The position numbers and the translations under genes were made by a program. From Podarcis bocagei (taxonomy: Eukaryota), in the NCBI GenBank assembly GCA_964188305.1, contig OZ076888.1: a DNA stretch of 64,000 nt. One strand, given 5' to 3'. Below, in pieces: positions 10,784-62,037 of the stretch. Position 1 is the first letter of the stretch, and each line of letters begins with the position of its first letter. Under the pieces are notes generated by a model that did no database searches, was not told the DNA's origin, and saw nothing but the letters and a program-made list of their open reading frames with translations.

Positions 10784-10927
10784 GCTTGGCTAGCTCAGTC
10801 GGTAGAGCATGAAACTCTTAATCTCAAAGTTGTGAGGATAAGGCCCATATTGAGCTAAAGATTCCTGCACTGCAGGGGGTTGGATTAGATGACCCTTGTG
10901 GTCCCTTCTGACTCTATAATTCTATTA
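10784..10927 (+). mobile_element. tRNA-Lys(CTT)-derived SINE with CR1 3' tail
   Basis: Head GCTTGGCTAGCTCAGTCGGTAGAGCATGAAACTCTTAATCTCA matches tRNA-Lys-CTT with a degenerate T-arm; tail GCAGGGGGTTGGATTAGATGACCCTTGTGGTCCCTTC..CTCTATAATTCTA matches the CR1 end at ~46017-46080. Confidence 0.85.
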
Positions 10928-17517: not shown

Positions 17518-17679
17518 TTATCTGGAGATGTAAGTGTATGTTCTGGAAGGGGAGCGGTTAGATTCTGCTTGGGTAGCTGGATCATTCAGGAAGTCCCAGA
17601 TGAGGATGGTATCATCATGCGAGCTGCTAACTATTTGAAATTCGTCAAACTGGAGCCGGAAAACTCTGCCGGAGTGCTC
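17518..17679 (-). CDS. BTRC: BTRC last coding exon: WD7 and C-terminus, [53 protein letters not shown]
   Basis: 162 nt including TAA at 17520-17518; the exon continues 32 nt to a CAG|gtaaa donor ending at 17486. Confidence 0.97.
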
Positions 17680-17879
17680 CTGGATGGGGAAAGGGAGACA
17701 AGTCAAATTCAGAAGCATTAAGGGTTGCTGTGATCTTAGCACTGTATGTTTCTGATTGCAGAAATGTGAGGTTTTAATACAGAAGTATTCACCTCCTCCT
17801 AAAGAACCAACTGCACAAACAAGCAGTCCTTTCATGACCTAACAAACAAAAAAATCAGGAAAAGGTTTGCACTCATGTT

Positions 17880-18062
17880 CAACCTCTAAATACCAGAAGC
17901 TGGGAATACTTGATGGAGGAGGGCACTTAGAAAAGTTAGTTGTTGCTTTCCCCCCCATTTGTGGCCATTCTAGTCCAATCTGGCTGGCCACTGGTGAAAA
18001 CAGGATGCTGGACTAGACAAATCCTTGTTCTGATCCAACAGAGCATTTCTTACTCTCTTATG
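17880..18062 (+). mobile_element. Old CR1 3'-end fragment
   Basis: ctggccactg..aacaggatgctggactaga..tgatccaacag..ttctta..cttatg terminal pattern. Confidence 0.6.
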
Positions 18063-18931
18063 TGAAATGAGTATTTATTATGCGGCCTTTCCTCTTATCA
18101 TCTGGAAATTGAGAATAAAACGGCACACAGTATGCTGCATTCATTGCAGAGACAGGTTTAATTTTAGATCCTGAGGAGATGCAGCAAAACAGCAAATGTT
18201 ACATTTCCCCAGTTTGCAAGCACCTAAAACTTGCCTGTTTCTGCTCACCCTTTTGAAGGTAAGAGTATCAGACACAACTTTAATGAGGCAGTGAAATCTT
18301 AGGGTTTGTTTACAGTGGTGGTTTAGCCACGAGCAGCAGGATTCACAAGTCAGTCTCAGCTGAAGTGTGAACATAGTCACTCAGGGGTAATGAGCACTGA
18401 CTCCCCCAGCACCTCATTAAGGCTTAATGAATTCTACACCACTTCATATATTTGGTCCTCTAGGATCAGAACAACGAAACAAGGTGGCTGCTTTTTCACT
18501 TATCCTCTGGGTCCTATGTTCTCTATAAAGCAGCACAACTGTATATATCAGGCAGAAGGAGTTGAGCTGGCCTATACCGTGTGAATTAGTTTGGAAAAAG
18601 CACAACTGCATTGCTACAACAATGGACACATCTGCCACAGAGCAGACAAGCTCAATGCCACCATTAGAGTCTTTGTATTCTGCTTATTCTCCACTTTAAG
18701 GTATAGTTTTAAGGCAAGGCAAATTCAAGACAAACCTATATTAGGACTTCTTTTGCATACGATGCAGGCTTACAAAAAGCAGCATTCTTTAATGGATTAG
18801 ATTTGGTGGCATGGCTAAGGAGGAGCATATTTTAGTCTAACTCTCATTTGACAATCCAGGTGAAGTTTTATTATGTATTAATACTGGGTAAATATATTCC
18901 CTCCCACCCGAGATCAATCAAAAGCTCTTAC

Positions 18932-19010
18932 CACAAGAGTGCGCAGGCAGAGGGTTCCAGCAGGGGCACGAGGGTCCAGGGCAGCTACCAGATCCCACAC
19001 CTTAATTTTC
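18932..19010 (-). CDS. BTRC: BTRC coding exon: [26 protein letters not shown]
   Basis: 79 nt, ccag acceptor and gtaag donor. Confidence 0.97.
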
Positions 19011-19844
19011 CTGGTGGCACGAAAAAGAAGAAAGAACCAGAGTTTCATTAAAAAGTAAGTGCAAGCACTACATTATATTAAAAAACCGAGTTATTAATCC
19101 ATCTCAGCTGATCAATCTATTTCATGGAGAAAAAAATAGATGTGCATCTGTTTTTGCAACTTGGCTTTGCTGTTTTCTCTTGTGTTGGCTGGAGGTAGTA
19201 TGGTTGATATGAAGATAACAGATCTTAATGGGAAGTGTATGGTTAACATAAAGATAAATTAAAACTAAAGAGGTGACATCAATTATAATGGAAGGAATGA
19301 TAAACGTTACACTGTATTGTACTGTGACATGACTTCAGTAATAGTAATAACATGTATAATTTGGTGAATCCAAGTAGTGTTTACCTCACCAAGCATGTCT
19401 TTTATTTTAGGTCCTGTTAATGGGACTTTTATAAGCAAATTCTATCTTCCACTTATCCAAATGAGGCCAGCAGGAAAGCAAATTTGATTGCTACTATAAG
19501 TGGTTGTCTGCAGAACCTGCAATGTATTTTAATATTTCCTCCTTTAAATACTACTAGTATCTGTTCTTCTTGCATTTTATATTTGTAATGCTGAATGGGG
19601 AAAATTGATTCTCTCTTTCTTCTGAAAATCCAAATTGCAAACAGGTTACTTGCTCAGTGAAGCACTGGATCTGTCAGAGTAAGGCATTTCTAATTTTCTA
19701 GCCTTCAGGGTAACAGTCAGTTTGGGGTGGGTGGGAGAGAGACTAGACATCTCTATTTCATCTCTAAATTTGTAAACTGCTCTGTGATCCTTGGATGAAA
19801 GGCAGGATAGAAATTTAATTAATAAATTAATAATAAATTCTCAC

Positions 19845-19955
19845 CCATCATAGGCTCCACTGACTATCCTCTTGGTATCAAAGCGAATACATCTCACCAG
19901 CTCTTCATGGCCTTCCAGAACTCGCAAACATGCCCCACATTCAATGTCCCATAAC
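19845..19955 (-). CDS. BTRC: BTRC coding exon: WD6, [36 protein letters not shown](G)
   Basis: 111 nt, ttctag acceptor and gtgag donor. Confidence 0.97.
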
Positions 19956-22900
19956 CTAGAAGACAAGGCAAACAATCATTATGCAATTGCCATAGAAAAA
20001 TGTTTTGGAAATACAAATTGCAAATCGAACCTGCCTATTTATCCAGGAAGGGGAGAACTCTGAAGAATCTCCCAATTTCTTCCTAAATTCACATTTTGTA
20101 TCTAGAAAATTACAAATTTCAATGTGAAACTCTACTGTTTTCATTTCCAATACTGTACATTTATGAGTAGTAGTGTTATTTCTGAATTACTGCCTGAAAG
20201 TTGTTTGGGCTACATAAGAGACAACAAATTATAGATAGCATGGAGATAGGGGCCCGTGTCAACTTGAAGAGACAAGATTGCTTGTTGCAGAAAAAATGAA
20301 ATCCTTCCTGTGACCTGGCTTTGCTATAGAAGAAAATCAGGTGGTTACCAGAAACGTATTTCCTTCACATTGCATCTGAAATATTAGCTTCTTAGAAAAA
20401 ACCTGCCACTTCTCAACACATCTTGGTAACCTCTGAAAACAGTTTACCAAAATGCACTAAATATGGGTATTTGTTAGGAGACTGTCACGACTGTTTAAAG
20501 TGCTATCATAGTGCCCTAAATGTGAATGTGGCATAACTATTACACATGTGCCTCTCTACTGCTGTAACATCTAGCTTAACCCATAGGCAGCTGTTTTTTC
20601 CTTCTGATTAAACAGGAAATGCCTCAGTCAATTAAAGCATGTTTCACATTACACTGACAAAGTGGTTGCTAACAGAAGGTGAAAAATGTCCTTGCTTTTC
20701 TGTGTGGAAAGAGCACATGATATAGGCAAATTTAAACAGTGTCACCCCCTATCACCTCCAAAAGAAAACTGCACAATAATTTGTGAAGCCATGCTGGGTC
20801 CTATGCTTGTTCATCCGAGTTACAATTAAATAGGAATGACAATATCACAATAGGTTTCCCACCTATTGGTTACAGTTGCTATTTGAAATAATCCTACTTC
20901 ATTCCACAGTGTCGATGCTAAACCTTTTGTGATTACCCACTGACCAAATGGGAATTGCTGCACAGAACACAAAAGACAGTTTGTGCGCAAGTGGTTTACA
21001 CTCTACACTGAAAATACAGGAGAGGAGGATGGGAGAAACAGCCACCCCAAGCCAGTTTTGAAAACTGATCTTTGGGAACTTGTTGGCCAACTGTGCACCT
21101 AACCTGCATTCTGCTGAGATATGTTGCCAACCACTGCAAAAATTCCAGCACAAGGATTTTATTCAGTGTAAGCATAAAAGTAATTGTATTCCTCTTTAAA
21201 TTTATTACCATATTGACATTTATATTTGTTGGTTATTACTGTGTGTAGTATTTGTGGTTACTTTTCCAAGCTCTGCAGAGTTTAACTATTTCCTGTTTGG
21301 ATTACTGTCGATGTTTGTGCCTTCCGAATTGTATGCTTTTTAGATTGTCTTTGATGTTGCTATTTCTTATGGAAGCGGTGGACAGTAGAGTGCTGGATCC
21401 AAGTTTAAACTCATTTAAACTCAAATTTTTCTCAAAACACGGTTTGTCTTATCTTTTGTTTAGCCATACCATGAAGGCACCCCCAACCCCCCCCCCAAAT
21501 GTATGTGTGCCCTGGTTTTTCCCCTCAAGCAAAGCCATGGTGTTATTTGCAAATCTTTTGATCTTTACAAGGCGTTAAATAGAATGCAGCTGTTGAGTGA
21601 AGGTGATAATTGGTTAATGGCTTCAACTGTCCCCTTACAATTCCGCATGTCTCTCATTTAAATCGTCTGCTGCAGTACCCTGACTTGTTTGTTTTCATTA
21701 CTCATGTTATTGCAATTACCTTCAGTAACTAGCTTTCTCTAAAAGCTACACTAGTCAATTACCAGCCTCTTAAGTCCCTTAATGAAAGGAATTGTTTCTT
21801 TGTTTTGTATCTTTATTTGGACACACAGTGATTCCATACATTTGACCTTGGACCCGGAGAATTATGCACAACGGATGAGGAAAGATGATACCATTAATTT
21901 GAGTGAGCTCTGTTGGTCTGATTAAGAAGGATCCTTTACCCGTTTTTTAATATCTGCACACTCCCTATACTCCCTGTATAGCTTTAGGAGTATGGCAACT
22001 TTTGTCTTGCTTGAATTGTTGCTGAGGACAATTTAAAAAGCAGATTGTCAATGCACTGTCCATGTGAGTCGGTGCTCAAACTGCTATGACCAAAGCTTTC
22101 GATTAAAAAAAATGAGGATTGGGCTGACACTTTATTTCTTGCAGGAAAGAAGAGCACATGAACGGAAGAAACCCTTTAAGCAAGTGCACAAATATTTGCA
22201 TTGACAAGATGATTGAACCATGAAACAGCTCATGGCTATAGAGGCAACTCATCACCATAGTTGACAAAAACAACAACTTGTATAGCTTTAAATGAGTAAG
22301 GATGAGGTCCATAGAAGAGTACAGGAAGACAGTACTTCCTACTCAATTCTGACCAATCAATGGCTTTCAATGATATTATTATACTTTGCCCTCTAAAAAC
22401 TGTCAAATTTCATCCAACGCAAAAATACACAGTTCATTGTATTACGGGATGGATCACTGCTTGGAACATTTCCAACCAAGGGACAGCAAGCAGACTCCAT
22501 GAGTCCAGGCCACCTGTTACAAATGGTGCCTGAGGCTAAGCACCATGAGAAAAACTTGGTTGGCAAAACCCCAGCACTGTTTGGGGGTTGGATTAAAAAC
22601 CTCTTGTTGCAAATCCAACTCTTCTAATCAGAGACACAAGCCATAAAGGGGAGCAGCCTTTATAACAGTCCATGCCAGTGCTTTCACATACTACATTTTG
22701 AGAAGTTAAACAATTATTACTGTTTGCTGTTAGCTCTTGCAGAATACAAAAATCTAAATAGCAGCTGTGTTAAAAAAGGAGATAAATATTTATGCAAAAT
22801 TAAACTATATGTAGTACTATTAATGGATTATCTTTGCTCATTGATGATTTGAAAGCTTTAAACTCTGGAAAACTGAGGCAACGACAAAAGCTTTTCCTTC

Positions 22901-23807
22901 TTACAGAAGCATTTTAGAACACACGTTTTACTCTGCTGTCAGGGCTGTGGCCATTTTAAGAATACATGGAATAGAGTGCAGACTTTTGATTTTTGAAAAT
23001 TCTACAAAGCTGAGTAATTTCTATTCCTGGTGGCTGCTCTTTCTAAGATTTCCTTGGCAAGACTTCAAATATTTAATTCAGCTGTATTATGTGAATTAAA
23101 TAAATATATATATATTGAATTCATTTTGAACTCAGATGTTTGGTGGATCTTGACATTTCTAGGTATATGGCACCCCCTGCCTTTTTAAAACCTTAAAACA
23201 ACGAGGCCTGGTTTACATGCACCACAGAGTAAAGTGGTATAATCCTGAAGAGCTAGTGTGAGCCACATCACTTCAAACAGCAGGTGAGGGATACCTGTCT
23301 TGAATGCTCCCCTACATTTAACCAAAAATAATAATGAACCATCTTCCCCCAATTTTATTTTATTTTTTTAAAAAAAACAGGACAAAGGCACTGGAACAGG
23401 CCTCTATCTGCTATACTAGTTTGTTTGTTTTTAAAAGGAAAAAGCTTATTGTGTTTTGTATGCGGGGGAGAATTCAGAAGTGCAATCCTTTACGTGCAAT
23501 CAGAAGCAGTACAATCTCAGTTTAATAAGTAGAGGGCACGTGGATGTGCTTTACAATTGCATTACAATTGCATGCAACATTAGTCTAATACTGACTGCTT
23601 CTTTTTAAACAATAAGGTGCTGGAGCAGGGCCTTTGGAGTGGGAACAGACAAGAACATGTTTAAGTACACCTTCACCACTGCTTTGTCTCACATTGGCAT
23701 TTTGTGAAAAAATGGCCATTTGAGAAGACTGCAAACACTGATGTGTAATGTGTGGTTTGGCTCTGAGAGAGGCAGCATGCTGTTCAGGTAACTGCTGTGT
23801 TTCTTAC

Positions 23808-23926
23808 CTGATTGTATTATCTGATGAACCACTCACTACTAGTCTGTCTCTGTACTGTAGACATGCAATACCTCGCTTGTGGCCATTCAACGTACGCACA
23901 AACTCACAGGTACTTGTGTTCCAGAC
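23808..23926 (-). CDS. BTRC: BTRC coding exon: WD5, [39 protein letters not shown](R)
   Basis: 119 nt, ttacag acceptor and gtaag donor. Confidence 0.97.
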
Positions 23927-24003
23927 CTGTAAGAGAGACACAAGTACATATAGAAGGAAATAATGGACAGGGATGTTTATGAGAAAGTCACAGATTGTTG
24001 ATG

Positions 24004-24242
24004 GGAGACAGTGTGGTATGATGGTCTGAGTGTTGGATTAAAGACTAGGAGGCTCTGGATTCCCACTCAGGCATGAAACTAAAAGGATGGCCTTAAGCCA
24101 GTCACTCACCCTCTCAGCCCAATCTACACTAACAGCATGATGATGAGAATCAAAGTGTGTGTGAAGAAGGGAACCATGCCCCCCTGATGAAGGCAGTATA
24201 GGAAGGTAGTATAAACGTATTGCGAAAAAGAAATAAATAAAA
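24004..24242 (+). mobile_element. Squam3/MIR-like CORE SINE
   Basis: cagtgtggtatgatgg..agtgttgga head, gccagtcact..ctctcagcc core, (TAAA)n tail. Confidence 0.75.
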
Positions 24243-24279
24243 CAAATGTCCAATGTCATCATGACTTCATGGTTTGCAC

Positions 24280-24529
24280 CTTAATCGTTCTGTCCCCCGA
24301 TGCTGATACAATGTATTTGTCATCGAAGTCGACCACATTGACGGCTGCCCTGTGTCCAACCAGTACCCTTCGTAGTGTGATGTCTGTTGGGGAGGCCATG
24401 TCCCACACGGCAATGGACCGATCTTTGGAGCATGTCACCATCATGCCATTATTAAAACGTAGGTGCAGTACTGCTTCACAATGATGGATCAGGGTGTTCA
24501 GCATCTCACCCGTATTAACATCCCACACT
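24280..24529 (-). CDS. BTRC: BTRC coding exon: WD3-WD4, [25 protein letters not shown]...[10 protein letters not shown]
   Basis: 250 nt, ccag acceptor and gtgca donor; matches ORF 24259..24528. Confidence 0.97.
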
Positions 24530-24714
24530 CTGGAATTTGTGGCAGAAGAGAGAAAAGTAGGGAAGGGGAGGAGAGAGATGTTTTAAGATTTTCCATTATT
24601 AAGCAGAAGGGGGAAATATGCCACACATTCCTGTAAAAGATGTGCTAAATAAGTAAGTCTGCCCGCCTAATTTGGTAAATTCAAATAGTATTTCAATAAG
24701 AATCTAATTCTTCC

Positions 24715-24880
24715 TCCCAGCAACTTTGTGTGGTGGGACATTATTATATCCATTTTACAGATGGGGAACTGAAAATGAGAAAATGTGTAATTTGCTCAGT
24801 GTCACACTGTGAATCTTGGGCTTGGCTGCAATTTGAAGCAAACTGTCCTCCTTTGGGTTTAGTCAACAGCACAGCTACAG
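24715..24880 (-). mobile_element. MIR-like CORE SINE fragment
   Basis: attatatccattttacagatggggaactga core motif. Confidence 0.65.
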
Positions 24881-25519
24881 AGTCCAACAAACAAAAGTTA
24901 ACACTGTAATGTCCAAACAGAGTAAGAAAAAGCAAGAACCTCAAAACAAAAGGATTTAACAGGAAAGAAGATCTGAGGACTGAAATCTTCTGCTGCATGT
25001 GCTGAGTTTCTCTGCTTGTGGGCGTAATGCAACATCTAAACTAGTACAGAATTTAGTTTGCGGAGCGCTTCCACCTTTGTTTTAAAAATCATGTCTAAAA
25101 AGAACAAGGGCAAAGTTTATCAAAAGGCAGGTCCTTCCTCAGCACATTTCACTCTTCTTAGCTTTCAAATAATCCATATTAACACACTCCAAATCAGCAA
25201 AGCCTCCAAAATAGATCATTTACTCCCAGCACAGAATTACCCCTGAACCAAATATGCTGCTCTTTCTTATGACTGTTTTTTTTTAATTCTAGGCCGCAGG
25301 ACTTGAACAATTCCTGAGCAATAAAAAATGTCATGTAGCATCCACAATTTGAAATATTCCTTTGGTCCTGCTAAAGCATAGTATAATATATTAATGGCTG
25401 GCATTAAGGAATTTAAAATACTCCTGCTAAACGAAAATCAGTTTAATTGGATATTTCATGCAAGCAGAATCTGTATGCTCAAGAAAACGTGCTGACAGCT
25501 ATCTTTTCCCCAAGGACAG

Positions 25520-25540
25520 GTGTGTGTGTGTGTGTGTGTG
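25520..25540. repeat. (GT)n microsatellite
   Basis: ~10 GT units. Confidence 0.9.
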
Positions 25541-26033
25541 TTTTGATAACCCTGGAATCAAGGGTTTAAATTGCTGACTCTGAAGGCTATTTTTACAAAA
25601 ACATAGAAACAGCCTTCCATTCCTTGTGCATGTCTTCCACCATTTCTGTTTTGAGGGCAGAATTTGAATAGGGCTTGTGGAGCAAATCCATCTTTCTTAC
25701 TTGCAACCTCTTCTTGAGCATTAGGAGTAGCGTGGTAGCCAAGACACTCATCATATAATCCCCCAATCTCAATATAATTTATTCCAAACTATGGTTTGAC
25801 ACTGCATGCAAACTGTTAACTTTTAGGCTTAATTTTCAAAAGCTTTTAGATGTATCTGGTTTGTTAACAGCTTTCTGTTTAATTTTTTTGCTTATTGACT
25901 GTTGGCTCTATTCTCTGCCTTTTATATATTTTTTCACTAAAATGGATTGTTTTAATTATGGGGTAAACTGCCTTGGAGGCCTGTATTTGTTAGAAAGGCA
26001 GGATATAAACATCCTCAATAAATAAATAGCTAC

Positions 26034-26152
26034 CTGACAGTGGAATCCGATGATCCAGTGATGATCACCCGCTCATCATACTGGAGGCAAAGGACTGACC
26101 CCGTGTGTCCAGTCAGAACCCTCTTGCATTCTAGCGTATTCTTGTCCCAAAT
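26034..26152 (-). CDS. BTRC: BTRC coding exon: WD2, [39 protein letters not shown](R)
   Basis: 119 nt, cctag acceptor and gtagc donor; WD40 GH...D pattern. Confidence 0.97.
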
Positions 26153-26682
26153 CTAGGAAGGCAAAAAGGGCACACATTTGGGATTTCACTACAAGGTAAA
26201 CAGATTGTATTGCTAGACTGGCTCTTTTGTTTTTCTGTAACACAGCATTTTATTTACTAAGGCGAGCAGAACTTCTTCTAAGTGGCACACAGTGCACTTT
26301 GTATTCCACAGGCACTTTGTAGCAATATAAACTATCCTTAATATCTCTGTTTTTAATATGAACATAGTCTTTACCCTTCTCATTAGGGAACAGGAAGACT
26401 TTAATTACTGAAGGACCAATAATGTGGCTAGCACTGAACAGAATGCAAGAAAATGAAACAGATAATATAGATTTATCCTCCTTGTTTGGAAGAAAGGGAG
26501 GAAAACCAATGCAATTCATAGTCAGACTTGATGGGGGGCACGAGGGGAGGGAAAGGAAGACAAGGATTAACCTCATCCTTCTCAGTTTCTCTCTTGCATT
26601 AGTCCTCCTAAATGAAGTTACACCTGCATTCTTCTGGGGAAAGGATTTTGTGTTCAATCATTGCCCACTGGGGAGCTCTCAC

Positions 26683-26820
26683 CTTGATGGTATTGTCTCG
26701 GAGGCCACTTACTATCTTCTGATCATCATATTGTAAACAATAAACCCCTTTGCTTGTTTCACTTCGGCAGTGGATTCGCTGTAAGCTGTGCCTTCCACAC
26801 CGCCAGTTTGATTCTATTGT
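26683..26820 (-). CDS. BTRC: BTRC coding exon: linker and WD1, [46 protein letters not shown]
   Basis: 138 nt, cag/gtgag; [14 protein letters not shown] is the BTRC type, not the FBXW11 type (HNLQRIQCRSENSK). Confidence 0.97.
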
Positions 26821-27893
26821 CTGGGGGAGAGAGAAACAATTATAAAGTGTGGAACAAACATCATGGAAATTTTGCACCAATAAAGCCTGCTGGACTCCTG
26901 GGACAACAGAAGCCGCTCTGATGCTGAAATCATTTATCATTAGATAGTCCCAGAGCAAGCTAGAAGGAAAAGGAACAAGTCCTTCTCCCTGCCACTTTCC
27001 CAATCCCTAGCTTCCATAAAGTTTCAAATCCCTCTAAGATGATTCTAGTTATTACAAAGAAAGCAAATGCACCATATATCTAGAATATAGCTGAAATTAG
27101 TGGGCTAATTAGTTCCATTCATTTCAGTGTGTCTACTCTGAGTAGAGCTAACATTGGATAAAACCCGGGATGTTCATTTCCCCTTGTGTTGACTGTCCAT
27201 TAGGTAGGTTTCCCCCCTTCCCCCACACTGTTGGCTCCACAGGTATCTGTCCCTTCAGTGATCTTCAAGAATGCAGAACTGGCCGCAATTGTATTCTTTT
27301 CTTTGGAACAGCTTCTCCAGAATTAAGGTCAACAGTGGGTACTGTAAAAAATGCAGGTTGCCTTGATTTGGTCTCAGTGACACTTGGAGAAGCTCAAACA
27401 GTTGTTTGAGTCGGTAAGACTTACTGTGATGAACTTTGTACATCCCTTGATCACAAATGTGACACTGCGAGATGCTTCTTCAATGGAAAGGTTGCCAAAT
27501 TTAATTCAGTGTAATCATGGAAGTTGAACTGAAATGGTATAATACACTGAGATTTAATTGTGGTGAGATGGTATAATCAAAGTGCCTGAACATTCAACTC
27601 CCTTCAAAGAAGGGGAGACCAACTATCAATGGATCTGGTACATACTGTATGACCCCTAAGTGTCTTAAAGACAGACTACTAAATTGTTTTTTTTATAACA
27701 GGACTCAGAGGGAAAATGTGTACAAATATGTACACACTATCACATTTGGCTTTTCTTTCATTCTACAGTAGATGCCGTAGGAAGCTATAACTGGCTGGCA
27801 TCTGTGCAGGAAATTTGAATTGTTTCACACACAACGAAGGAGCTCAGATGGGGGTTTCACATGCAATTGCATAGTCTTTTTTCTGGCTCTTAC

Positions 27894-27990
27894 CTCTATA
27901 TCCTGTATAATTTTGGGATAAAGTGCTCTGTAGAAGGAGTTGGGAGGGGCTATCCCATCGGGTGGCTTGTTCTTAAAAAGATACTGTCCC
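27894..27990 (-). CDS. BTRC: BTRC coding exon: [32 protein letters not shown]
   Basis: 97 nt, tttag acceptor and gtaag donor; phase consistent with neighbours. Confidence 0.96.
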
Positions 27991-30489
27991 CTAAAAGAAA
28001 GGAAGAAAGAAAAGCAGCATTGCTCATTTAGCCATGGCTATTTCATTCGAGGATTTGCGAGAGAGACTTGTAGAGCTTATGTTTGGTAGATGAAAATCGA
28101 TGATTTAAAAGGGATGCTGTAGGGTCCGCATCATAATACTACTGCCTTTAGACATGTGGCAATTCATCAAATGGTAGGCATCTAAATAAATATATGGCCC
28201 TTTTGCAAGTAAAGGTGGATAGATAAAAGGGTCCTTCAAAGGAAAGTGAGAATAGAAGAGGACCTCAGTATGTTCCCCACGTTCTAATTGCTCCAAAACA
28301 AAAAGAAATTAAGCAATTCATAGTATCAGCAATAGCATTTTACTGCTCCTCTAATCTTCTGAGTAAACTGCATTAGCTTCTTCCTCAACTTAGCCTGGTC
28401 ATGGAATGCACATTTTTGCCAGAGAAAGGGAGGGAAACCCAGTGAACGGCAATCACTTCATGCTGTGTAAATTTTTTAAAATTCCTCATCCTAAAGTTAA
28501 GGAGCCACCTAACACTGTGCGGAAGCTAGTAAACCCCACCATGGGCATACTAACAACTCTTCTGCCTGGCAACATTCCTTGTGAAGCAGAAATGGGCACA
28601 AATCCTCCGAGTATAATCCTGGCATGTGAGGCATGGCATTTAGCCTAGGCCAGCTCTCTGCTCCCCATTTCACTGTTGCATTATTTCCGACAGGTTTTTT
28701 TCTATGCATTCCTTCCTTGCCACAAATCTGAAAATATATGCTGAGAAGTTTCCTTTTGCGTGAGATGCCCTGGGCACATGCAAGGTAAACCCTGCTTTGG
28801 AAGAGTGATTTGAATCAACAAAATGACTAATAAAAATACTGAGCAGTGTGATACAAGGGGGGGGGGATACATACAATTTCAAACACACATTTCTGGAAAA
28901 ACTAAGCTCTAACAAATCTCCATTTTAAAATATAGCAGGTATAATGCTTTGCCTACAAGAATGTCAAGCTTTGCAAACTTTCCCTAGTTGTATGTGTAGC
29001 TCAGCAACACCTTATAAGTAAGCAATGGTACCCTCTGCAAACTAGCAGATTTGTGCCCCTAATGAGAAAAAGAACCCCAATGCTGAACTGTTAGCCGAGA
29101 AAGTATCAGAAGCTACTCATTCCCCACTTTCTATCTTATGAGTATGCACCATTCATCTCCCTGGAAGAGAACTCTATGCAGGCATCTTGAAGATGTTGGA
29201 AGCAGCACATTCGCATTACTGCCTAGACATTTTGTCAGTGTGCTGTTTGACATGTTAACTATGACCCACCAAGATCTCCACAATCAGAAGTCAGTTTTGC
29301 TCACTACAGATTCTGAAGCAGCAAAAGTAATGTCTGTGCCTTGCTTGTTGTTAATTCTGCCATGGGAAAGTAATCTGGGTACCTCTAGAAATCAATACTA
29401 AATACAGAACTGTATTTTAGGTATTTTTTGAAGCGCTGAAAGCATTACACAAACATTTTTTCTGCCCTCATAATCTATTAAACTGTAACATATTTCTAGT
29501 GCCAAAGCCCTTAATAGAATTTGCACTTGGCAAGTTTCTGGCCTTATTTTTAATTTTTGTTTTAATAGCAGCTAAAATGCCTTAGCTGTCACCTTTGTCT
29601 TGTTTATGAAATATTCATACCCATTTCCTCACAGACAACATACGAGGGAGGCTCCTTGGATAGAAAATTATGTATTAAGGGGATTACCCAAGAGAGCGAA
29701 GCATCTAATGAAATGTTAACAGAGCAGCTCTAGACTTGGGGAAAGTCTTGCATAATAGAAAAAACTATTCCGTCTGATTAACTAATCTATCTGAATTTCT
29801 GCATGCTTGCCCTCAGTGGTTTGTACTCTTGGCTTTATGGCTAAAGATAAAACAGGTCTCTAATTGTGAAAATCTGCTGAGGAAAACAAAAGTGACCTAA
29901 CACATTCATAACATGTAAAATGCACCTACTTTAGTTGTACAGCGAGTACATAAACTTCTGAAAGTCTAATGAATTAATATATCAAAGACTGCTCTAAGTA
30001 ACGGGAGGGAAGGATACTGTATGTTACACAGACTTACGCTGCTTGTTCACCCACCCAAAAGAAGGGCCATCACTGGTGGACGGTTGAGGTGAAACAGAGT
30101 GACCACCCCAGACTCTGGACTTGGCTGATGGTCCGCATCTGGCACTGGCAGCTACAACTGGCAGCCCTGCTACCTCTCACCCAGCAAGGCTTTGCACCTC
30201 TTCCCTTCATACAGCAAGGCAGGGGGAGAGGAAATGGGGTTGGAGGGCCTTTCCAGCACATCTGCTGCTAAACCAGCATCAAAAGGGGGGGGGGAGTAAG
30301 CCGTGTGTGTGTGTGTGTGCGTGTGTGTGGAGAGAGACTAAAGTCGTTGCAAATCACCTGACAGCAAAGAAAAAAGATTGACTTCTATTATCAGATAGCT
30401 CTGCAGTTTGTTTCGACTTTACATTTCAACCTCTGATGAAGGCCCAACATTGATATATGCCGAAAGGCCTTGGGTTTATTGACTGATTG

Positions 30490-30711
30490 AGTGATTATAT
30501 TTATATCCCATCTTTTCTCTAAGGATCTGAAGGTGGCATACATAGTTCTGCTGCTCCTCACTTAATCCCCACAACAACCTTGTAAGGTAGGTTAAGGTTA
30601 GAGGCAGTGACTGGCCCAAGGTCACCCAGTGAGCCCGATGGCTAAGTGGGGCTTTGAATGCTTGTCTCCCTGGTCCTATTCTGACACTAATCCCTACCCC
30701 ACAGTGGCTCT
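30490..30711 (-). mobile_element. Squam3-type SINE
   Basis: atttatatccc..cacaacaacc..gtgactggcccaaggtcacccagtgagc..ccacagtggctct, the reverse complement of a Squam3-type element. Confidence 0.8.
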
Positions 30712-31431
30712 AAAAACTCCATACAGCATCTAGGGATTTTTCTCCTTCATTTTTTGGTAAAGGAAAAACAATTTTGATGGGGGAGAGGAGGGGCTGCCAC
30801 CACCACCACCACCACTGCCATTGCCATGAAGAGAAGGAGGAGCAGCAGAATATATATATGCTGGATATATATATATCAGATATATGAGAGGACGTATCCC
30901 CTGTTCCTGTTACTAAGCTTGGCCAGTCATCTCTGGAGGTAGAACTAAATTACTGGATTCTGCTTCCGGATCAAGGGGAAGTGCCTACCTGCCCCAAGTT
31001 AGGAAATAATACATACTCCCAAAAAACGGCCTCAGGAAAAAAATGAAGAATGAATGGTAGAATTTAAAAGGCAATCTTCAATTTTCAGATAAAATGAACT
31101 GTCATACTGATGACCTAAAGCTGTTTTCAATTTACTTGTTTTGCTAGGCTAAGTCAGTGCAAGGATTCCTGTTAGCACAATGGGACCTTTCCCATGCCAT
31201 CCCCAAATCTGTTCTGGAGGGTCTGGAGAACCCACAGAACAGCAGGTGATGGGAGGCGATGGAAGATCGTTTCATCAGAGAAGTAGAAATTCTTGCACTG
31301 ATGGAATGATCTCCTCAGCATTGTGTTGAATACAGCCCCATACCATTTAAAAACCATACCACTGTGAGTCGGAAATTACCAGCACCTACTCCCTCACTGA
31401 ACAAGGGAAACTGCATGAAAGATGCTCTCAC

Positions 31432-31618
31432 CATCCTCTCCGCTCTGCCAAACCCCTCCACAGCGAGTCCGTCCGGACCATTCTCTCAATCAGCTTCTTC
31501 CACAGCATGCCGTCAGATGTCACTCGGTACCATTCCTTGCACACCAGCTCAACAGCACACAAAGACTTGGCATCCAGGTACGACAGGATATTCTCAGCGA
31601 TGTGATCCAGGCCGCGAG
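31432..31618 (-). CDS. BTRC: BTRC coding exon: F-box, (A)[61 protein letters not shown](W)
   Basis: 187 nt, ttccag acceptor and gtgag donor; hand translation gives the F-box motif; not captured by the ORF track. Confidence 0.97.
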
Positions 31619-32091
31619 CTGGAAGGGAAAAAGTATAGGCAATTAATTAGCACTGGAGAGTTCATGAGAAGCCCATCTCTGCTCAGACATTTTCACCCCC
31701 ACTGTTGCTCATTCCCTTCCCTGTAATGCAGAGCTGGGATGACTGGGCAGAAAATAGTCTCCTGTGAAGTTCTGAAACCAGCAGCTTCTTATGGATAAGA
31801 AACAGCAAAGCATTAAAGATAAAAGTGGAAAGTGTTAGAGATGATCAAGAATCCTGGAAGTCATTTCCAATCTATTTCTATGAGTTTTAGCACTAGGGGG
31901 ATGTTCAATGGAAGGCTTTTCTCACTTGATGATGCACCCCCCCCCAATCTTGCTATATTAGGACCATTTCTCATTTTGCTACTACAGCTGTTCTTGTATT
32001 CCACCAGCTCAGAAAGCTACTTTTTGATGCAAAGAAGAAAGGAATAAAAGGTCCAATTATCACTTACGAAAAAGGGGTGGTGGTGGTGAAG

Positions 32092-34314: not shown

Positions 34315-34682
34315 TTCTAGACTGAACTGAACATTTTGCATAGGAAATAATATGCTGTACAGAAATTACACGAACTTGATGACCCCCTTCCCAAGACCCT
34401 GCTAATTTCTATGATCATAAAGTCCAAATCCTGTTAACTGTTATGTGCCCCCAGTAAATGAAAGACAACTAACCAAACATCACAAGTGCACCTAGGGGGG
34501 AAAAACCATGACAGCATACATTTTATGATAGGTGACATATCCTCAAATGGCAACTCCTTTCTAGGACTCCAGGGACAGAACACCCTGCTACTGAAGAAAG
34601 CCGTTCGAGAAAAGTCAAGGTCTTTTTACACATTTTTGAAGCCTGCAAAGTCTGTGTGTTTGCCAATAGCTTTTCAGACTAC

Positions 34683-34914
34683 CTGGTAGTGCCGTGATGA
34701 AGTCTCTCTGTAACATAGGTTTGAGGTATGAGTTGATGTGCCCGTGCTGATAATGACACATCTGGGAGATGAGATGTTCCACAAATTCCACTTGGTCGGA
34801 CTCTGACCACTGCTCAAAATACTTGATACAGAGCTCCTTCTCCTTCTCATAGCTTGCAGATAGCTTCCTTTGCTTTGGCACAATCATGCTTGAAGTGCCA
34901 TTGGCAAGTTTTGT
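34683..34914 (-). CDS. BTRC: BTRC coding exon (human exon 5 equivalent): dimerisation D-domain, [18 protein letters not shown]...[11 protein letters not shown]
   Basis: 232 nt, ag acceptor at 34916-34915 and gt donor at 34682-34681; translation near-identical to human beta-TrCP1 as I recall it; phase 0 in, phase 1 out. Confidence 0.97.
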
Positions 34915-37900: not shown

Positions 37901-38227
37901 TGTGCTCTCTGATGTCTGGAAGGTCCTGAAGCAAAGGACACCAGCTCTTTGAATGACGTCTCCTCCCCTCAAGTTTTCATCTGAGCCAGAAGGAGAATTG
38001 TTTGAGTTTGGCTCATAGGCTGCTGGAATGGTTTTGCATTGCTGTTGAGTTGTCTGAACTGTTTTTAGGATTTATACAATGTTTAAGCACCTTACAGTTT
38101 TGGTTGGTTGGGATAGGCGAGTAATTCACAAGCCACTTTTACTCATCCCTACCTCTTTTGCAATGGTGGGCTCCTTCCAGAAAGCAACACTTTCTTTCCC
38201 CCAGCATAAGCAAGTAAGCAAACAGCA

Positions 38228-38350
38228 GCATAGGAACACAAGCAGCTGCTTTAATACTGAGTCAGGCCATTCATGCATCTAGATCAATACTGCCTACACT
38301 GACTCCAGCAGCTGTCCAGGTTGTTTTACCACTGAGTTATGGCCCTTCTC
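38228..38350 (-). mobile_element. Internally deleted Squam2-like SINE
   Basis: agctgctttaatactgagtcaggccatt..catctag..tacactgact..taccactgagttatggcccttc. Confidence 0.6.
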
Positions 38351-39284
38351 CACAGTCCCACAGGAAATAGCAGTGCTGTTACTTCCAACATGCAGTTCCA
38401 CAGAACTTGTGAATAAGCCAAAACAGTCAGCACGGGTTCACTAGTGAAAAAAACATGATATGCCTTGCATGTGTAAGGATTATCACAGAGTGGCAATATT
38501 TGAGCCTTGTTAACAAAATTCTTTTGAGTATATATTTCCTTCACCCACAGACCCCCCATTTTCTGTCCCAGCGTTTCTCTTGCTCCTCCTTCCTCACTCC
38601 AATGTACAGTTTCCTTCTATGACTTCAAATCAAACTCACCAATTGAATTGTAGCATACTCTGCTGCACAGTACTGAGAATGAGGTGATGGAAGGAAATAA
38701 TAATTATATGGGAGGGAATGTATATGTGAGTATGCATGCCGGAGGGTGGCAGTCTGGAACTGAAAATATCCCATTTGGTTCCAGGCTGTTCAGCTTGTGG
38801 CTTTGGGCAAGTCATTTCAACCCTCTCTGACTTAGTTTATGGAAGGTGCTATGTAATTTCTAGGCAGTATAACCCTTTATGACTACAAAAAAACATCCCT
38901 ACTCCTATACATATAAACTTCATTGCATGTCCTTTAATCTCCACAAAGCTGTAAAAGCACAGCTCCCCTCCCCCCTTTCTAAAGCATTCAATTAAAATAT
39001 TTTGAAGCATCTGTCGAAGTCTAGTAAAACAACAAAAACCTAGAATCAAGTAGTGATTTCTTAGAAACCCACTGATGACTAGCAATCTCAAAATCCTGAC
39101 AAAACTATTCCGTATTCCACTAGGAGAAAATAACTCCTGCAATATTGGGTATACCAAACACCTGCATCCTCACTAAAGAAAGAAGAGGGAAGCTTGATTG
39201 TCAGGTCCAAACTATATGTGATACTGGCAAATTCATGATTGTAAAAGCAGGTCTGCCCATTCACATGGAAAATGAGATGATGTT

Positions 39285-39385
39285 CCTGTTTAGGGAAATT
39301 TTTAATGTTTGATGTTTTATCATGTTTTTAATATTCTGTTGGGAGCCACCCAGAGTGACTTGGGTGGGGTATAAATAAATAAATC
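39285..39385 (+). mobile_element. L2 LINE 3' tip
   Basis: cctgtttagggaa..gttgggagccacccagagtg..gggtggggtataaataaataaat. Confidence 0.65.
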
Positions 39386-40508
39386 ATCATCATCTAGCTG
39401 TTTGAAAGAGCAGAGGTAGGAATGCTGGCCCCTTTCCCACCTGTGTTTCATTCCACACATTTTCCAAAGCTGTGACAACTAGTGATGGGGTGTAAAGAAT
39501 ACACAGTTGCTCCAAGTTATGCTTGAGGGGGAGGAGTCCCTATGTCCTTACCAATGGATGTCAGATGACAGCCATGGAGGTTTTACTACCCTCTGCCTCC
39601 TGCTAGTGGCTGGCCCTGCCATTCTCTCACATGGCCTGTCCCAGGATGCAAACACGGCTACTAGAAAACGTATGGAAAGAAGAACAGCAGAAGGAAGAGA
39701 AGGGGGGATGGGAAGGGGGCTTCGGGACATTCTGTCTGTGTAATCCATATGGAATTTCCTTCACTTTTCAATAGACACATCTCCAGAACCTCAAAAAAAA
39801 AAATGGTTTCTCTAACCTAGCCTAAGTGCTTACCTCTTTCCGCTTCAATTTCTGATGTGAGAAAAACTACTAGGACTATGAGCAGCATCTTGCCATTGTC
39901 ATATATTCTTCTTAGAATTTAACTCAACAAAATGCAGCTTTGCTTTATTTGAGTGTCTCAGTGGTGTCTTCTGGAGATCAATTGAACAGTCCTGAACACA
40001 AGGGCATTCTATTGATCTCAACGAGGGCACACAATGTTTCTGCTGAGCTGTCTATTACAAGATCCTTTAGGTAAAACAGTTAATGTGGTGGTCGTACAGT
40101 AGGTACAATGAAGCAAAGGCTAAGATAAAAAAGGATAAACCCAATATGCCAAAACTTTTGAGGAAGGAATATGTTCTAATGTCCTGTTGTATCACCAAAC
40201 TAAAACGGACTTGCCTATTGGTAAAAATCACAATGATTTTCTGTCCCAGTATCATAAGCGTTAAAGATGCCATCCTTGGTCAAGGTCCAGAGAAGGGTGT
40301 GGTGTGTTTCTCCCACTCTGATGCAATGGTTCTTTCCTCATAAAAGCTGTGACCCATATTAAAAGCTGCTTTTTGAACTCAGGAAACCTTCAAACACCAT
40401 TTGCAATGCAGCCTGGGTAGTGAAAAATATGAATTGAAACTTCGTTGGATGTGCAGAAGCATTTCCACAAGCAAAACAGGTTTACCCAATTGTTGCCAAC
40501 AGCTGTAA

Positions 40509-40593
40509 AAAGGTAAAGGTAAAGGACCCTTGACAGTTAAGTTCAGTTGCAGATGACTCTGGGGTTGTGGTGCTCATCTCGCTTTACAGGCCA
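40509..40593 (-). mobile_element. 5'-truncated Sauria SINE 3' end
   Basis: aaaggtaaaggtaaagg tail and gactctggggttgtggtgctcatctcgcttta, the reverse complement of 6855-6925. Confidence 0.8.
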
Positions 40594-41483
40594 AGTACGT
40601 GCGCTGTACATAGCGGTGGGAACCCTCCGTCACCGCTACAGCCGCATTAGAGGATCCTCCATTCATGGCTGTAGCGGCAACAGAGGGATCCCGGCACCGT
40701 CCGTATGGCGCTGGAGCACTGCTGGTGGCAAATTGCTATGTACAGTGCATGTAGCAATGCCGCACATGCGCCCTACGTAGCGATGCCCCGGGTGTCATGA
40801 TGCCTTTGTTCACCCCTGACTACATCCACACCATAAATAATAACAACAACAAACCCACACCATCCTCACTGGGCAAGCACAAAATTAATAGGAAGAAACT
40901 GTGGTCAGTCAACTTGGTGCCCTCTAGATGTTGTTGGCGTACAACTCCCATCAGTCCCAGCCAGCATGGCTAATAGTCAGGGATGACCACTATAGCAACA
41001 AGGGAAGCAAGGCACATCGGGTCATGAACTCTTGAACTCTAACCCCAGAGTAAATAGTACCACCTATAAGAATCCAACCTGTGATACAACATGATAGGGC
41101 GAGGGAAAGAGAGAGAAAGCTTTTTCACAGCAAAGAAATTCTGTCTAACCACTATTCTGTTGGAGCTTTCAAGTGGGCACAGATAATGAAATATTAACAA
41201 ATTTCAAAGAAGCTTGCTAGGGCTCTATGCAGTATAAAAAGGCTGTTAAACACAAGGACATGTATACATTTGCCAACAGCTTAGAGCTTCGGAGCCTGGG
41301 AAATAACCTGTTCCTATATTGCACAATTGTCTATAGGTTTCCCCTGAGAGGTTTTTTTGTACTGGAGAATGATTTACTTCTGGCCACCGGGGGAGGCTAT
41401 GGAGAAGGAACTTTTTTATACGTACTTCTTTATATGTAGTCCATTTAACTAGTCACATCTGAGTACACTGAGGGACTCTAGTC

Positions 41484-41619
41484 CAGTGTTTCCCAACCTT
41501 GGGCCTCCAGCTGTTTTTGAACTACAATTCTCATCATCCCTGACCACTGGTCTTGCTAGCTAGGGATGATGGGAGTTGTAGTTCAAAAACAGCTGGAGGC
41601 CCTAGGTTGGGAAACACTG
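41484..41619. mobile_element. 136-bp palindromic hAT MITE
   Basis: TIR CAGTGTTTCCCAACC...GGTTGGGAAACACTG; perfect TSD ctctagtc. Confidence 0.92.
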
Positions 41620-41851
41620 CTCTAGTCTACACTTCCCTTGTATTTGGTCTGTCTCACGGAGCACTATGATTTGGTAAGATTCAGTTGCTGACATTGCTGA
41701 CTAGCACAGCTTATAGTGCAGACGAAGAACACCTTTTCTAGGTCTCTCTCAGCAAGGCAACCAAATAGTAACATGTATTAGTGTGTGTCCTCAAAATAAA
41801 CGTTCATCACACAGTTCAGCTTTGCATGCCTGGCAGAGTACGGATTTGCTA

Positions 41852-42055
41852 CAGAATATATGATGCTGCCTTATAGCAGGTTGGGCCATATGTCCAAGTA
41901 GTCCAGTACTGTCTACTCTGACTGGCAATGGATCTCCCATTTCTCAGATGGAGGTCTTTCCAATCATCTTTTCGTTGATCCTTCCAAATGGAGATGCCTA
42001 GAATTGAGCTTAGGACCTGCCATATGCACAGCATATGCTGAACAATGGCCCCTTC
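41852..42055 (-). mobile_element. Squam2-like SINE
   Basis: gctgccttata..cagtactgtctactctgactggca..ggagatgcctagaattga..aggacc. Confidence 0.65.
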
Positions 42056-42527
42056 ACCCACCTTCCCATTCCATACTATTTGCTTGCGCTCATCTTTTGC
42101 CTTCCGTTTTCCACCTTGCTCTGTAGCCATAGCATTCAACTAGGCAAGGTCAAGCTTGTTTGCATGGATGCAGTTGACTTTTGCTGCCAGCACATACGGA
42201 AGATCAGCAGAAGGCCTGGGACTCAGGTGTTGTAAGGCTCTTACACAATGTCAGGGCAGGACGGCTATCTATGCAAATGCTAAGTGTTATTGCCATCATC
42301 ACCACCACAGGGAAGCCGACTGCAGCACCCAGTGCTAGCTTTGAGACCCAATTAAGATTTGGCAGTATTCGTCCCTCAATGTCAGTATCAGGGTAGAACA
42401 GATTCATCCAGCCCTCCCCTGCACTCCTCATCTATAGCTGCCTCTGTTCTTTGCTGGTAAACATGCTGATCTTTACAGAGCCACCTTAACAGAATTTTTG
42501 GTTGGGCCCAAGTGAAGAGAATTGGGG

Positions 42528-43093
42528 NNNNNNNNNNNNNNNNNNNNNNNNNNNNNNNNNNNNNNNNNNNNNNNNNNNNNNNNNNNNNNNNNNNNNNNNN
42601 NNNNNNNNNNNNNNNNNNNNNNNNNNNNNNNNNNNNNNNNNNNNNNNNNNNNNNNNNNNNNNNNNNNNNNNNNNNNNNNNNNNNNNNNNNNNNNNNNNNN
42701 NNNNNNNNNNNNNNNNNNNNNNNNNNNNNNNNNNNNNNNNGCACTAATTACAAGACGTTTTCCCAGTGCTTATGTAAAATATGACAGAGCAGCAGCTTAG
42801 GGAATTGCAAAAAAACTGCTTCTAATTTCCACTGAGAAACTGACAAACANNNNNNNNNNNNNNNNNNNNNNNNNNNNNNNNNNNNNNNNNNNNNNNNNNN
42901 NNNNNNNNNNNNNNNNNNNNNNNNNNNNNNNNNNNNNNNNNNNNNNNNNNNNNNNNNNNNNNNNNNNNNNNNNNNNNNNNNNNNNNNNNNNNNNNNNNNN
43001 NNNNNNNNNNNNNNNNNNNNNNNNNNNNNNNNNNNNNNNNNNNNNNNNNNNNNNNNNNNNNNNNNNNNNNNNNNNNNNNNNNNNNNNNNNNNN
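42528..43093. other. Two N-runs (42528-42740, 213 nt; 42850-43093, 244 nt) around a 109-bp unique island
   Basis: Directly visible. Confidence 0.99.
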
Positions 43094-60160: not shown

Positions 60161-60316
60161 NNNNNNNNNNNNNNNNNNNNNNNNNNNNNNNNNNNNNNNN
60201 NNNNNNNNNNNNNNNNNNNNNNNNNNNNNNNNNNNNNNNNNNNNNNNNNNNNNNNNNNNNNNNNNNNNNNNNNNNNNNNNNNNNNNNNNNNNNNNNNNNN
60301 NNNNNNNNNNNNNNNN
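60161..60316. other. N-run, 156 nt
   Basis: Directly visible. Confidence 0.99.
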
Positions 60317-61681: not shown

Positions 61682-62037
61682 NNNNNNNNNNNNNNNNNNN
61701 NNNNNNNNNNNNNNNNNNNNNNNNNNNNNNNNNNNNNNNNNNNNNNNNNNNNNNNNNNNNNNNNNNNNNNNNNNNNNNNNNNNNNNNNNNNNNNNNNNNN
61801 NNNNNNNNNNNNNNNNNNNNNNNNNNNNNNNNNNNNNNNNNNNNNNNNNNNNNNNNNNNNNNNNNNNNNNNNNNNNNNNNNNNNNNNNNNNNNNNNNNNN
61901 NNNNNNNNNNNNNNNNNNNNNNNNNNNNNNNNNNNNNNNNNNNNNNNNNNNNNNNNNNNNNNNNNNNNNNNNNNNNNNNNNNNNNNNNNNNNNNNNNNNN
62001 NNNNNNNNNNNNNNNNNNNNNNNNNNNNNNNNNNNNN
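61682..62037. other. N-run, 356 nt
   Basis: Directly visible. Confidence 0.99.

What the first reader, a model, noticed from the sequence alone, without database searches (positions are those of the whole stretch)
42528..43093. N-runs probably hide an ultraconserved element (uc.309 region), masked rather than unassembled
Seen: two irregular short N-runs flank a 109-bp unique island with enhancer-like motifs (GCACTAATTAC, CTAATTTCC, TGACA), and neither has repeats at its edges, unlike typical assembly gaps. Recalled knowledge: human ultraconserved elements uc.307-uc.309 lie in the long BTRC intron before the D-domain exon, two close together and one further toward that exon. The gap layout here (61.7 kb, 60.2 kb, then ~42.8 kb, exon at 34.9 kb) mirrors this. 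Inference: near-identity to human or other vertebrate DNA triggered a contamination filter that hard-masked real lizard enhancers, which would falsely suggest UCE loss.
Basis: partly seen in the sequence, partly recalled or inferred. Interest (0 to 1): 0.75.

Follow-up and report, generated by a model that had tools for sequence, protein, structure and literature searches.

The report
Masked conserved DNA in BTRC intron
The two runs of N are most likely deliberate masks laid over lizard DNA that is almost identical to human ultraconserved enhancers in an intron of the BTRC gene. That makes them a data-handling artefact over already known elements, not a biological novelty or a real loss.

Summary
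N-runs of 213 and 244 letters enclose a 109-letter unique island. Two more runs (156 and 356 letters) lie 17 to 19 kb away. All four sit in the intron 5' of the BTRC D-domain exon, on the minus strand.

- All flanks are unique and free of repeats.
- Three of the four lengths are 4 mod 8.
- The near-identical BTRC coding exons in the same window are unmasked.
- Contigs of three related lizards lack the last ~580 letters before the run, in a tool that silently drops human-like contigs, while short raw reads cover that stretch.
- Human BTRC holds one of the densest UCE clusters. The uc.308 to uc.309 spacing (20.9 kb) matches the lizard spacing (17.1 kb) in the same order.

Whether this pair is uc.309 itself cannot be tested, because the operators bar filling the Ns or comparing them with human. 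I did not lay reads across them.

The mask most likely comes from this scan's own data preparation.

First readers noted similar N-runs on other pieces of this genome. None had been followed up.

Interest is low.

The parts
42528..42740 (.). N-run 1, 213 letters (5 mod 8). Probable purposeful mask over human-like non-coding DNA.
   Evidence: Unique left flank. Contigs that should run into it are missing from three contig sets while raw reads cover the flank.
42741..42849 (.). 109-nt unmasked island, 38% G+C, with TAATTA, TAAT and two TGACA motifs. Probably the less conserved middle of a ~570-nt conserved block.
   Evidence: Motif statistics and uniqueness in the window.
42850..43093 (.). N-run 2, 244 letters (4 mod 8). 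Probable purposeful mask.
60161..60316 (.). N-run 3, 156 letters (4 mod 8), 17.07 kb 5' of run 2 in gene direction. Candidate counterpart of uc.308.
   Evidence: Human uc.308 to uc.309 distance is 20.9 kb.
61682..62037 (.). N-run 4, 356 letters (4 mod 8). A further masked element.
34683..34914 (-). BTRC D-domain exon ([18 protein letters not shown]...ITALP), unmasked. The acceptor is AG before ACAAAA and the donor is CCAG|GTAGT.
   Evidence: (E 5e-42, 68/69 identical to human FBXW1A residues 118-186).
17518..31646 (-). The remaining 3' coding exons of BTRC (F-box, WD40 repeats, stop codon after YTYISR at 17518-17520). All are unmasked.
   Evidence: The F-box exon scores 138 bits to FBXW1A against 120 to FBXW11. 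The last exon scores 167 against 153 bits.
41946..42527 (.). Last ~580 nt of the left flank. Depth is 0 or near 0 in the contig sets of three related lizards, but raw reads cover it.
   Evidence: tables 1, 2 and 8.

Best explanation
The N-runs at 42528-42740 and 42850-43093, and those at 60.2 and 61.7 kb, are purposeful hard masks. They were most likely written by this scan's own data preparation over stretches of lizard DNA that are nearly letter-for-letter identical to human DNA. They lie in the intron 5' of the BTRC D-domain exon. In human this intron holds uc.306, uc.308, uc.309 and one of the densest clusters of ultraconserved elements. What is hidden is therefore most likely the lizard copy of one or two of these elements (uc.309 is the best positional candidate), with a less conserved 109-nt middle left visible.

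Shown: the positions and lengths, the gene context, the unique flanks, the unmasked coding exons, and the missing contigs. Inferred: that human-likeness triggered the mask, that a word-based procedure with a step of 8 explains the lengths, and the identity of the element.

Biologically, such elements are expected to act as long-range developmental enhancers. Btrc lies in the Lbx1 regulatory domain, so Lbx1 is a plausible target. That too is inference.
For: (1) The operators' note says N stretches are gaps or masked on purpose.

(2) Lengths are 213, 244, 156 and 356. Three of four are 4 mod 8. Size estimates of real gaps would not show this.

(3) The flanks of all four runs are unique and free of repeats.

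(4) In one search, laid on the left flank only, the contig sets X15, X1 and X5 (three species labels) have depth 0 or near 0 from about 41946 to 42527, and no contig runs over the right end. Contigs run over the left end normally, and 150-nt raw reads of X24 cover the hole at about 1x.

(5) BTRC exons that are 99% identical in protein are unmasked. This fits a criterion of long exact nucleotide identity, which synonymous changes break.

(6) Literature: uc.306 and uc.308 are BTRC-intronic (PMC3626580). uc.309 is at chr10:103,267,031-103,267,298, 268 nt, intronic in BTRC (PMC8701292; PMC8749388). BTRC holds 11 UCEs within 25 kb and is one of 52 top clusters (PMC13513235). Human uc.308 to uc.309 is 20.9 kb against 17.07 kb between runs 3 and 2 here (ratio 0.82), in the same order relative to the gene.
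Against: No direct look under the mask was allowed, so human-likeness is inferred. The reads tool itself warns that a hole in contig depth proves nothing. One of the four lengths (213) breaks the mod-8 pattern and needs an extra assumption, such as two blocks out of phase through an indel. Four lengths are few, and the 9-of-9 claim comes from an unchecked note. The masked letters total 457, more than the 268 nt of uc.309, so more than that one element would be involved. Coordinates of uc.307 and of the human D-domain exon were not found, so only one spacing could be compared.
Confidence: 0.72

Rival explanations
1. These are ordinary assembly gaps whose lengths are scaffolder estimates. The sequence between the flanks was simply not assembled.
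For: The lengths are irregular, as estimated gaps are. One length does not fit the mod-8 pattern. The scan's program labels them assembly gaps. The hole in contig depth next to the run is declared non-probative by the tool.
Against: There are no repeats, low-complexity DNA or contig-breaking sequence at any of the eight edges. Three of four lengths fall in one residue class. All four gaps fall in the one part of the window whose human counterpart is a UCE cluster, and none falls in the repeat-rich parts that do break short-read contigs (39.2, 40.4-41.1, 41.4-41.7 kb). Under this reading, unique flank DNA should still be present in the contigs of three species, and it is not.
Confidence: 0.13
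2. The masks are real, but they were put into the public assembly by the submitters or a database contamination screen that took the lizard's UCEs for human contamination. Public users would then see false UCE loss.
For: It shares all the evidence for masking. Submitters do sometimes hard-mask flagged spans (general knowledge, not tested here).
Against: The scan's own tools apply a human-likeness filter, and the operators state that masking is done on purpose. The same place is affected in the reads tool, which is independent of the assembly record. Contamination screens usually flag adaptors or long foreign spans, not 150-350-nt conserved elements (general knowledge). A regular step of 8 in the lengths suggests a single word-based program applied uniformly.
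Confidence: 0.1
3. One of the N-runs hides a coding exon of BTRC, the exon upstream of the D-domain exon, rather than a non-coding element.
For: The exon encoding the stretch that matches human residues 69-88 was not found anywhere in the unmasked window, even allowing 10 substitutions in 20 residues. Run lengths of 156-356 letters are exon-sized.
Against: The far better conserved D-domain, F-box and WD40 exons are not masked, so a less conserved N-terminal exon should not be. The exon may simply lie beyond 64 kb. uc.308 and uc.309 are described as intronic or non-exonic.
Confidence: 0.05

Closest known systems
Human ultraconserved element uc.309 (hg19 chr10:103,267,031-103,267,298, 268 nt; PMC8701292, PMC8749388)
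   Same: It is intronic in BTRC. It lies 3' of uc.308 in gene direction at a comparable distance: 20.9 kb in human against 17.1 kb between N-runs here.
   Different: The sequence under the N-runs was not and may not be compared. The masked letters total 457 in two blocks, against 268 nt for uc.309. In human, 11 dedUCE elements lie within 25 kb, so the assignment is not unique.
dedUCE cluster 39 in the middle of human BTRC (11 UCEs within 25 kb; PMC13513235)
   Same: Several discrete, extremely conserved non-coding blocks lie in the same intronic region of the same gene.
   Different: Only four masked blocks are seen in the 29 kb of intron in this window. Which of the 11 they match is unknown.
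Assembly gap (run of N of estimated length)
   Same: Both are runs of N of irregular length inside a scaffold.
   Different: The flanks are unique, the lengths show a mod-8 regularity, the runs coincide with a UCE cluster, and contigs of relatives are missing from a human-filtering tool.
Long-range developmental enhancers of the Lbx1/Fgf8 landscape at 10q24 (SHFM3 locus; PMC10020157)
   Same: Btrc lies inside the Lbx1 regulatory domain. Conserved non-coding blocks in a bystander gene's introns are the usual form of such enhancers. The visible island carries homeodomain-type and MEIS/TGIF-type motifs.
   Different: No enhancer assay or chromatin data exist for these lizard elements. The four named Fgf8 AER enhancers lie in Fbxw4 introns, not in Btrc.

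Membership tests
Ultraconserved element uc.309 (Bejerano-type UCE) | At least 200 nt identical between human, mouse and rat, and an orthologous alignment of the lizard letters to that element | not testable with these tools
   The letters are written N. The operators bar filling them or comparing with human or with other copies of the genome.
Ultraconserved element uc.309 (Bejerano-type UCE) | Lies in a BTRC intron, 3' of uc.308 in gene direction | tested here: met
   The gene is BTRC on the minus strand. The runs lie 5' of the D-domain exon. Order and spacing fit (17.1 kb against 20.9 kb).
   Three of four lengths are 4 mod 8. The chance is 0.007 for a class named beforehand and 0.057 for any class. 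One run breaks the pattern.
   The locus is a top human UCE cluster. All BTRC exons in the window are unmasked despite about 99% protein identity.
   Contigs that should cover 41946-42527 and run into the N-run are absent from X15, X1 and X5, while raw reads of X24 are present. Caveat: the tool says a hole proves nothing.
Assembly gap | Edges lie in repeats, low-complexity or otherwise hard-to-assemble DNA | tested here: not met
   plus single-copy raw-read depth on the left flank.
Assembly gap | Reads or long molecules fail to join the two flanks at the stated distance | not tested
The spanning test was left out.

The most novel reading that the evidence does not exclude
The public assembly of this lizard itself carries these hard masks. 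Its most human-like enhancers would then have been erased by a contamination screen, which would bias UCE presence/absence surveys and UCE-based phylogenomics for this and perhaps other species.
Probability: 0.08. Interest if true: 0.4.

Novelty: already known. Interest (0 to 1): 0.1.

Why it matters
It matters mainly as a caution for the scan. Short irregular N-runs in unique DNA of this genome should be read as purposeful masks over extremely conserved elements. They are not gaps, deletions or UCE losses, and nothing biological should be inferred from their presence or length. The hidden biology, ultraconserved non-coding elements in the BTRC intron within the Lbx1/Fgf8 developmental landscape, is already described in mammals. 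Deep conservation of such elements in reptiles is expected.

Tried and rejected
- Coordinates of uc.307 were not found in the searchable literature or in the supplements I could read.
- The upstream BTRC exon was not found. Exact motifs gave nothing on the gene's strand, and a fuzzy search allowing 10 substitutions in 20 residues found nothing on either strand. I cannot say whether the whole 34.9-64 kb stretch is one intron.
- The Rfam scan of the whole window gave only a tRNA-like SINE head at 10784-10856 and nothing near the N-runs.
- The window file carries no soft-masking case information.
- Earlier notes of the scan hold no follow-up on similar N-runs.
- Enhancer motifs in the island were considered as evidence and largely rejected. 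They were chosen after the fact and each is only mildly enriched.
- The big protein searches were not used. The gene was settled by PDB sequence matches.

Full report
**Observation.** The window has exactly four N-runs: 42528-42740 (213), 42850-43093 (244), 60161-60316 (156) and 61682-62037 (356). The motifs are only mildly unusual. Three TAAT/ATTA cores are reached by 13% of all 109-nt windows and two TGACA/TGTCA by 2.2%, and the motifs were picked after the fact. The 300-nt flanks of all four runs and the island match nothing else in the window. No direct or inverted repeat touches an edge. The only low-complexity DNA nearby is a 24-nt A-rich patch 35 nt from the right edge.

**Gene context.**
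- The ORF at 34615-34887 (minus) matches human F-box/WD repeat protein 1A (BTRC) residues 118-186 with 68 of 69 identities (E 5e-42).
- The exon runs from 34914 (acceptor AG before ACAAAA) to 34683 (donor CCAG|GTAGT).
- The remaining 3' exons follow on the minus strand down to the stop codon at 17518-17520.
- The F-box exon and the last exon score higher against FBXW1A than against FBXW11 (138 against 120 bits, and 167 against 153 bits). The gene is therefore BTRC and not its paralogue.
- All four N-runs lie 5' of the D-domain exon in gene direction, 7.6 to 27 kb away.
- The exon matching human residues 69-88 was not found in the unmasked window. It lies beyond 64 kb, is too diverged to be found, or is hidden.
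- Because the region is non-coding as far as can be seen, reading frame across the runs is not an issue.

**What the literature says about this intron in human.**
- uc.306 (chr10:103,212,039-103,212,262) and uc.308 (103,245,812-103,246,088) are listed as BTRC-intronic (PMC3626580, supplement).
- uc.309 is at 103,267,031-103,267,298, is 268 nt long, and is intronic and antisense to BTRC (PMC8701292; PMC8749388).
- BTRC is one of only 52 places in the human genome with more than 10 dedUCE elements within 25 kb, with 11 in the middle of the gene (PMC13513235).
- The human distance from uc.308 to uc.309 is 20.9 kb. The lizard distance from run 3 to run 2 is 17.07 kb (ratio 0.82), in the same order relative to the direction of the gene.
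- I could not find coordinates for uc.307.

**Mask or gap.** I did not lay reads across the Ns and did not compare them with human or with other copies of the genome. I worked beside them. Five indirect lines point to a mask.
1. The flanks are unique (see the observation above).
2. Three of the four lengths are 4 mod 8. An earlier unchecked note on another piece of this genome says nine of nine are (s1-340249). With that class named beforehand, the chance is 0.007; for any class it is 0.057. A union of fixed-length words taken every 8 letters would give such lengths. A block that joins two phases, for instance across a small insertion or deletion, would break the pattern, as the 213-letter run does. 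That part is inference.
3. The coding exons of BTRC are about 99% identical to human in protein, yet they are unmasked. This is expected if the criterion is long exact nucleotide identity, which synonymous changes break.
4. I laid reads on the left flank only, 36600-42527. The contig sets of three related lizards (X15, X1, X5) cover the unique parts of the stretch. They break at the high-copy repeats at 39.2, 40.4-41.1 and 41.4-41.7 kb. Then they show depth 0 or near 0 from about 41946 to the last letter before the N-run, and no contig runs over that end, although contigs do run over the other end. Raw 150-nt reads of X24 cover the same 580 letters at about single-copy depth. The tool leaves out contigs that match human DNA. 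A hard-to-assemble gap would not remove the unique flank from three independent contig sets. The tool warns that a hole proves nothing, so I count this as supporting, not decisive.
5. The operators themselves say that N stretches may be masked on purpose, and the whole tool set applies a human-likeness rule.

**Who masked.** Nothing here supports that. The same place is affected in the scan's reads tool, which does not depend on the assembly record, and the length regularity suggests one uniform program. The most economical reading is that this scan's copy was masked. The public record could not be inspected.

**Continuity.** Whether the letters on both sides are continuous at exactly the written distance could not be tested directly under the rules. 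Indirectly, the order and spacing of the runs agree with the human order of uc.308, uc.309 and the 3' exons. Both flanks are unique DNA of the same locus.

**What is hidden and how it would work.** Most likely the runs hide the lizard copies of one or two of the BTRC-intron ultraconserved elements. uc.309 is the best positional candidate for the 42.5-43.1 kb pair. The masked letters total 457 in two blocks against 268 nt for uc.309, so a neighbouring element or a longer human-lizard identity is probably included. Such elements usually act as long-range developmental enhancers. Btrc lies within the Lbx1 regulatory domain of the Lbx1/Fgf8 (SHFM3) locus (PMC10020157), so Lbx1 is a plausible target. 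The island's TAATTA and TGACAG motifs fit homeodomain and MEIS-type input. All of this is inference from established knowledge and was not tested here.

**Verdict.** The uc.309 label is plausible but untestable here. The warning about false UCE loss in public data is not supported. The thing itself is a data-handling artefact over already known elements, so interest is low. First readers made similar notes on other pieces of this genome (s1-352339, s1-356624, s1-340249, s1-345300, s1-345324, s1-349644, s1-354250). None had a follow-up, so a single answer from the operators would settle all of them.

Noticed in passing
window 41476-41619: A 144-nt foldback element has 41-nt arms that are 95% complementary (41501-41541 and 41562-41602). 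It has very high copy number in all four runs laid (summed contig word depth above 100,000, and about 160-fold depth per strand in raw reads against about 1 in unique DNA). It gives a sub-threshold hit to the mir-5408 hairpin family (52 bits; gathering score 90). Contigs of X15 and X5 join 41475 directly to 41620, so the insertion is either polymorphic among relatives or collapsed by the contig builder.
   Followed up: partly
window 39174-39371, 40362-41153, 41352-41747: Three blocks of very high-copy interspersed repeats break the short-read contigs of all three related lizards. None of them carries an N-run.
   Followed up: partly
window 10784-10856: A tRNA-like sequence lies just above Rfam's gathering score (29.5 against 29 bits).
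   Followed up: no
window 34915-64000 (minus strand): The BTRC exon that matches human residues 69-88 is not detectable in the unmasked sequence, even with 10 substitutions allowed in 20 residues. It lies beyond the window, is strongly diverged, or is hidden.
   Followed up: partly
window 36600-39313: The contig of run X1 differs from the window by several small insertions and deletions: 24 and 13 letters left out, and 18 put in near 38144-38159. X15 is identical over the same stretch. X15 is therefore probably the same species as the window, and X1 a close relative.
   Followed up: no
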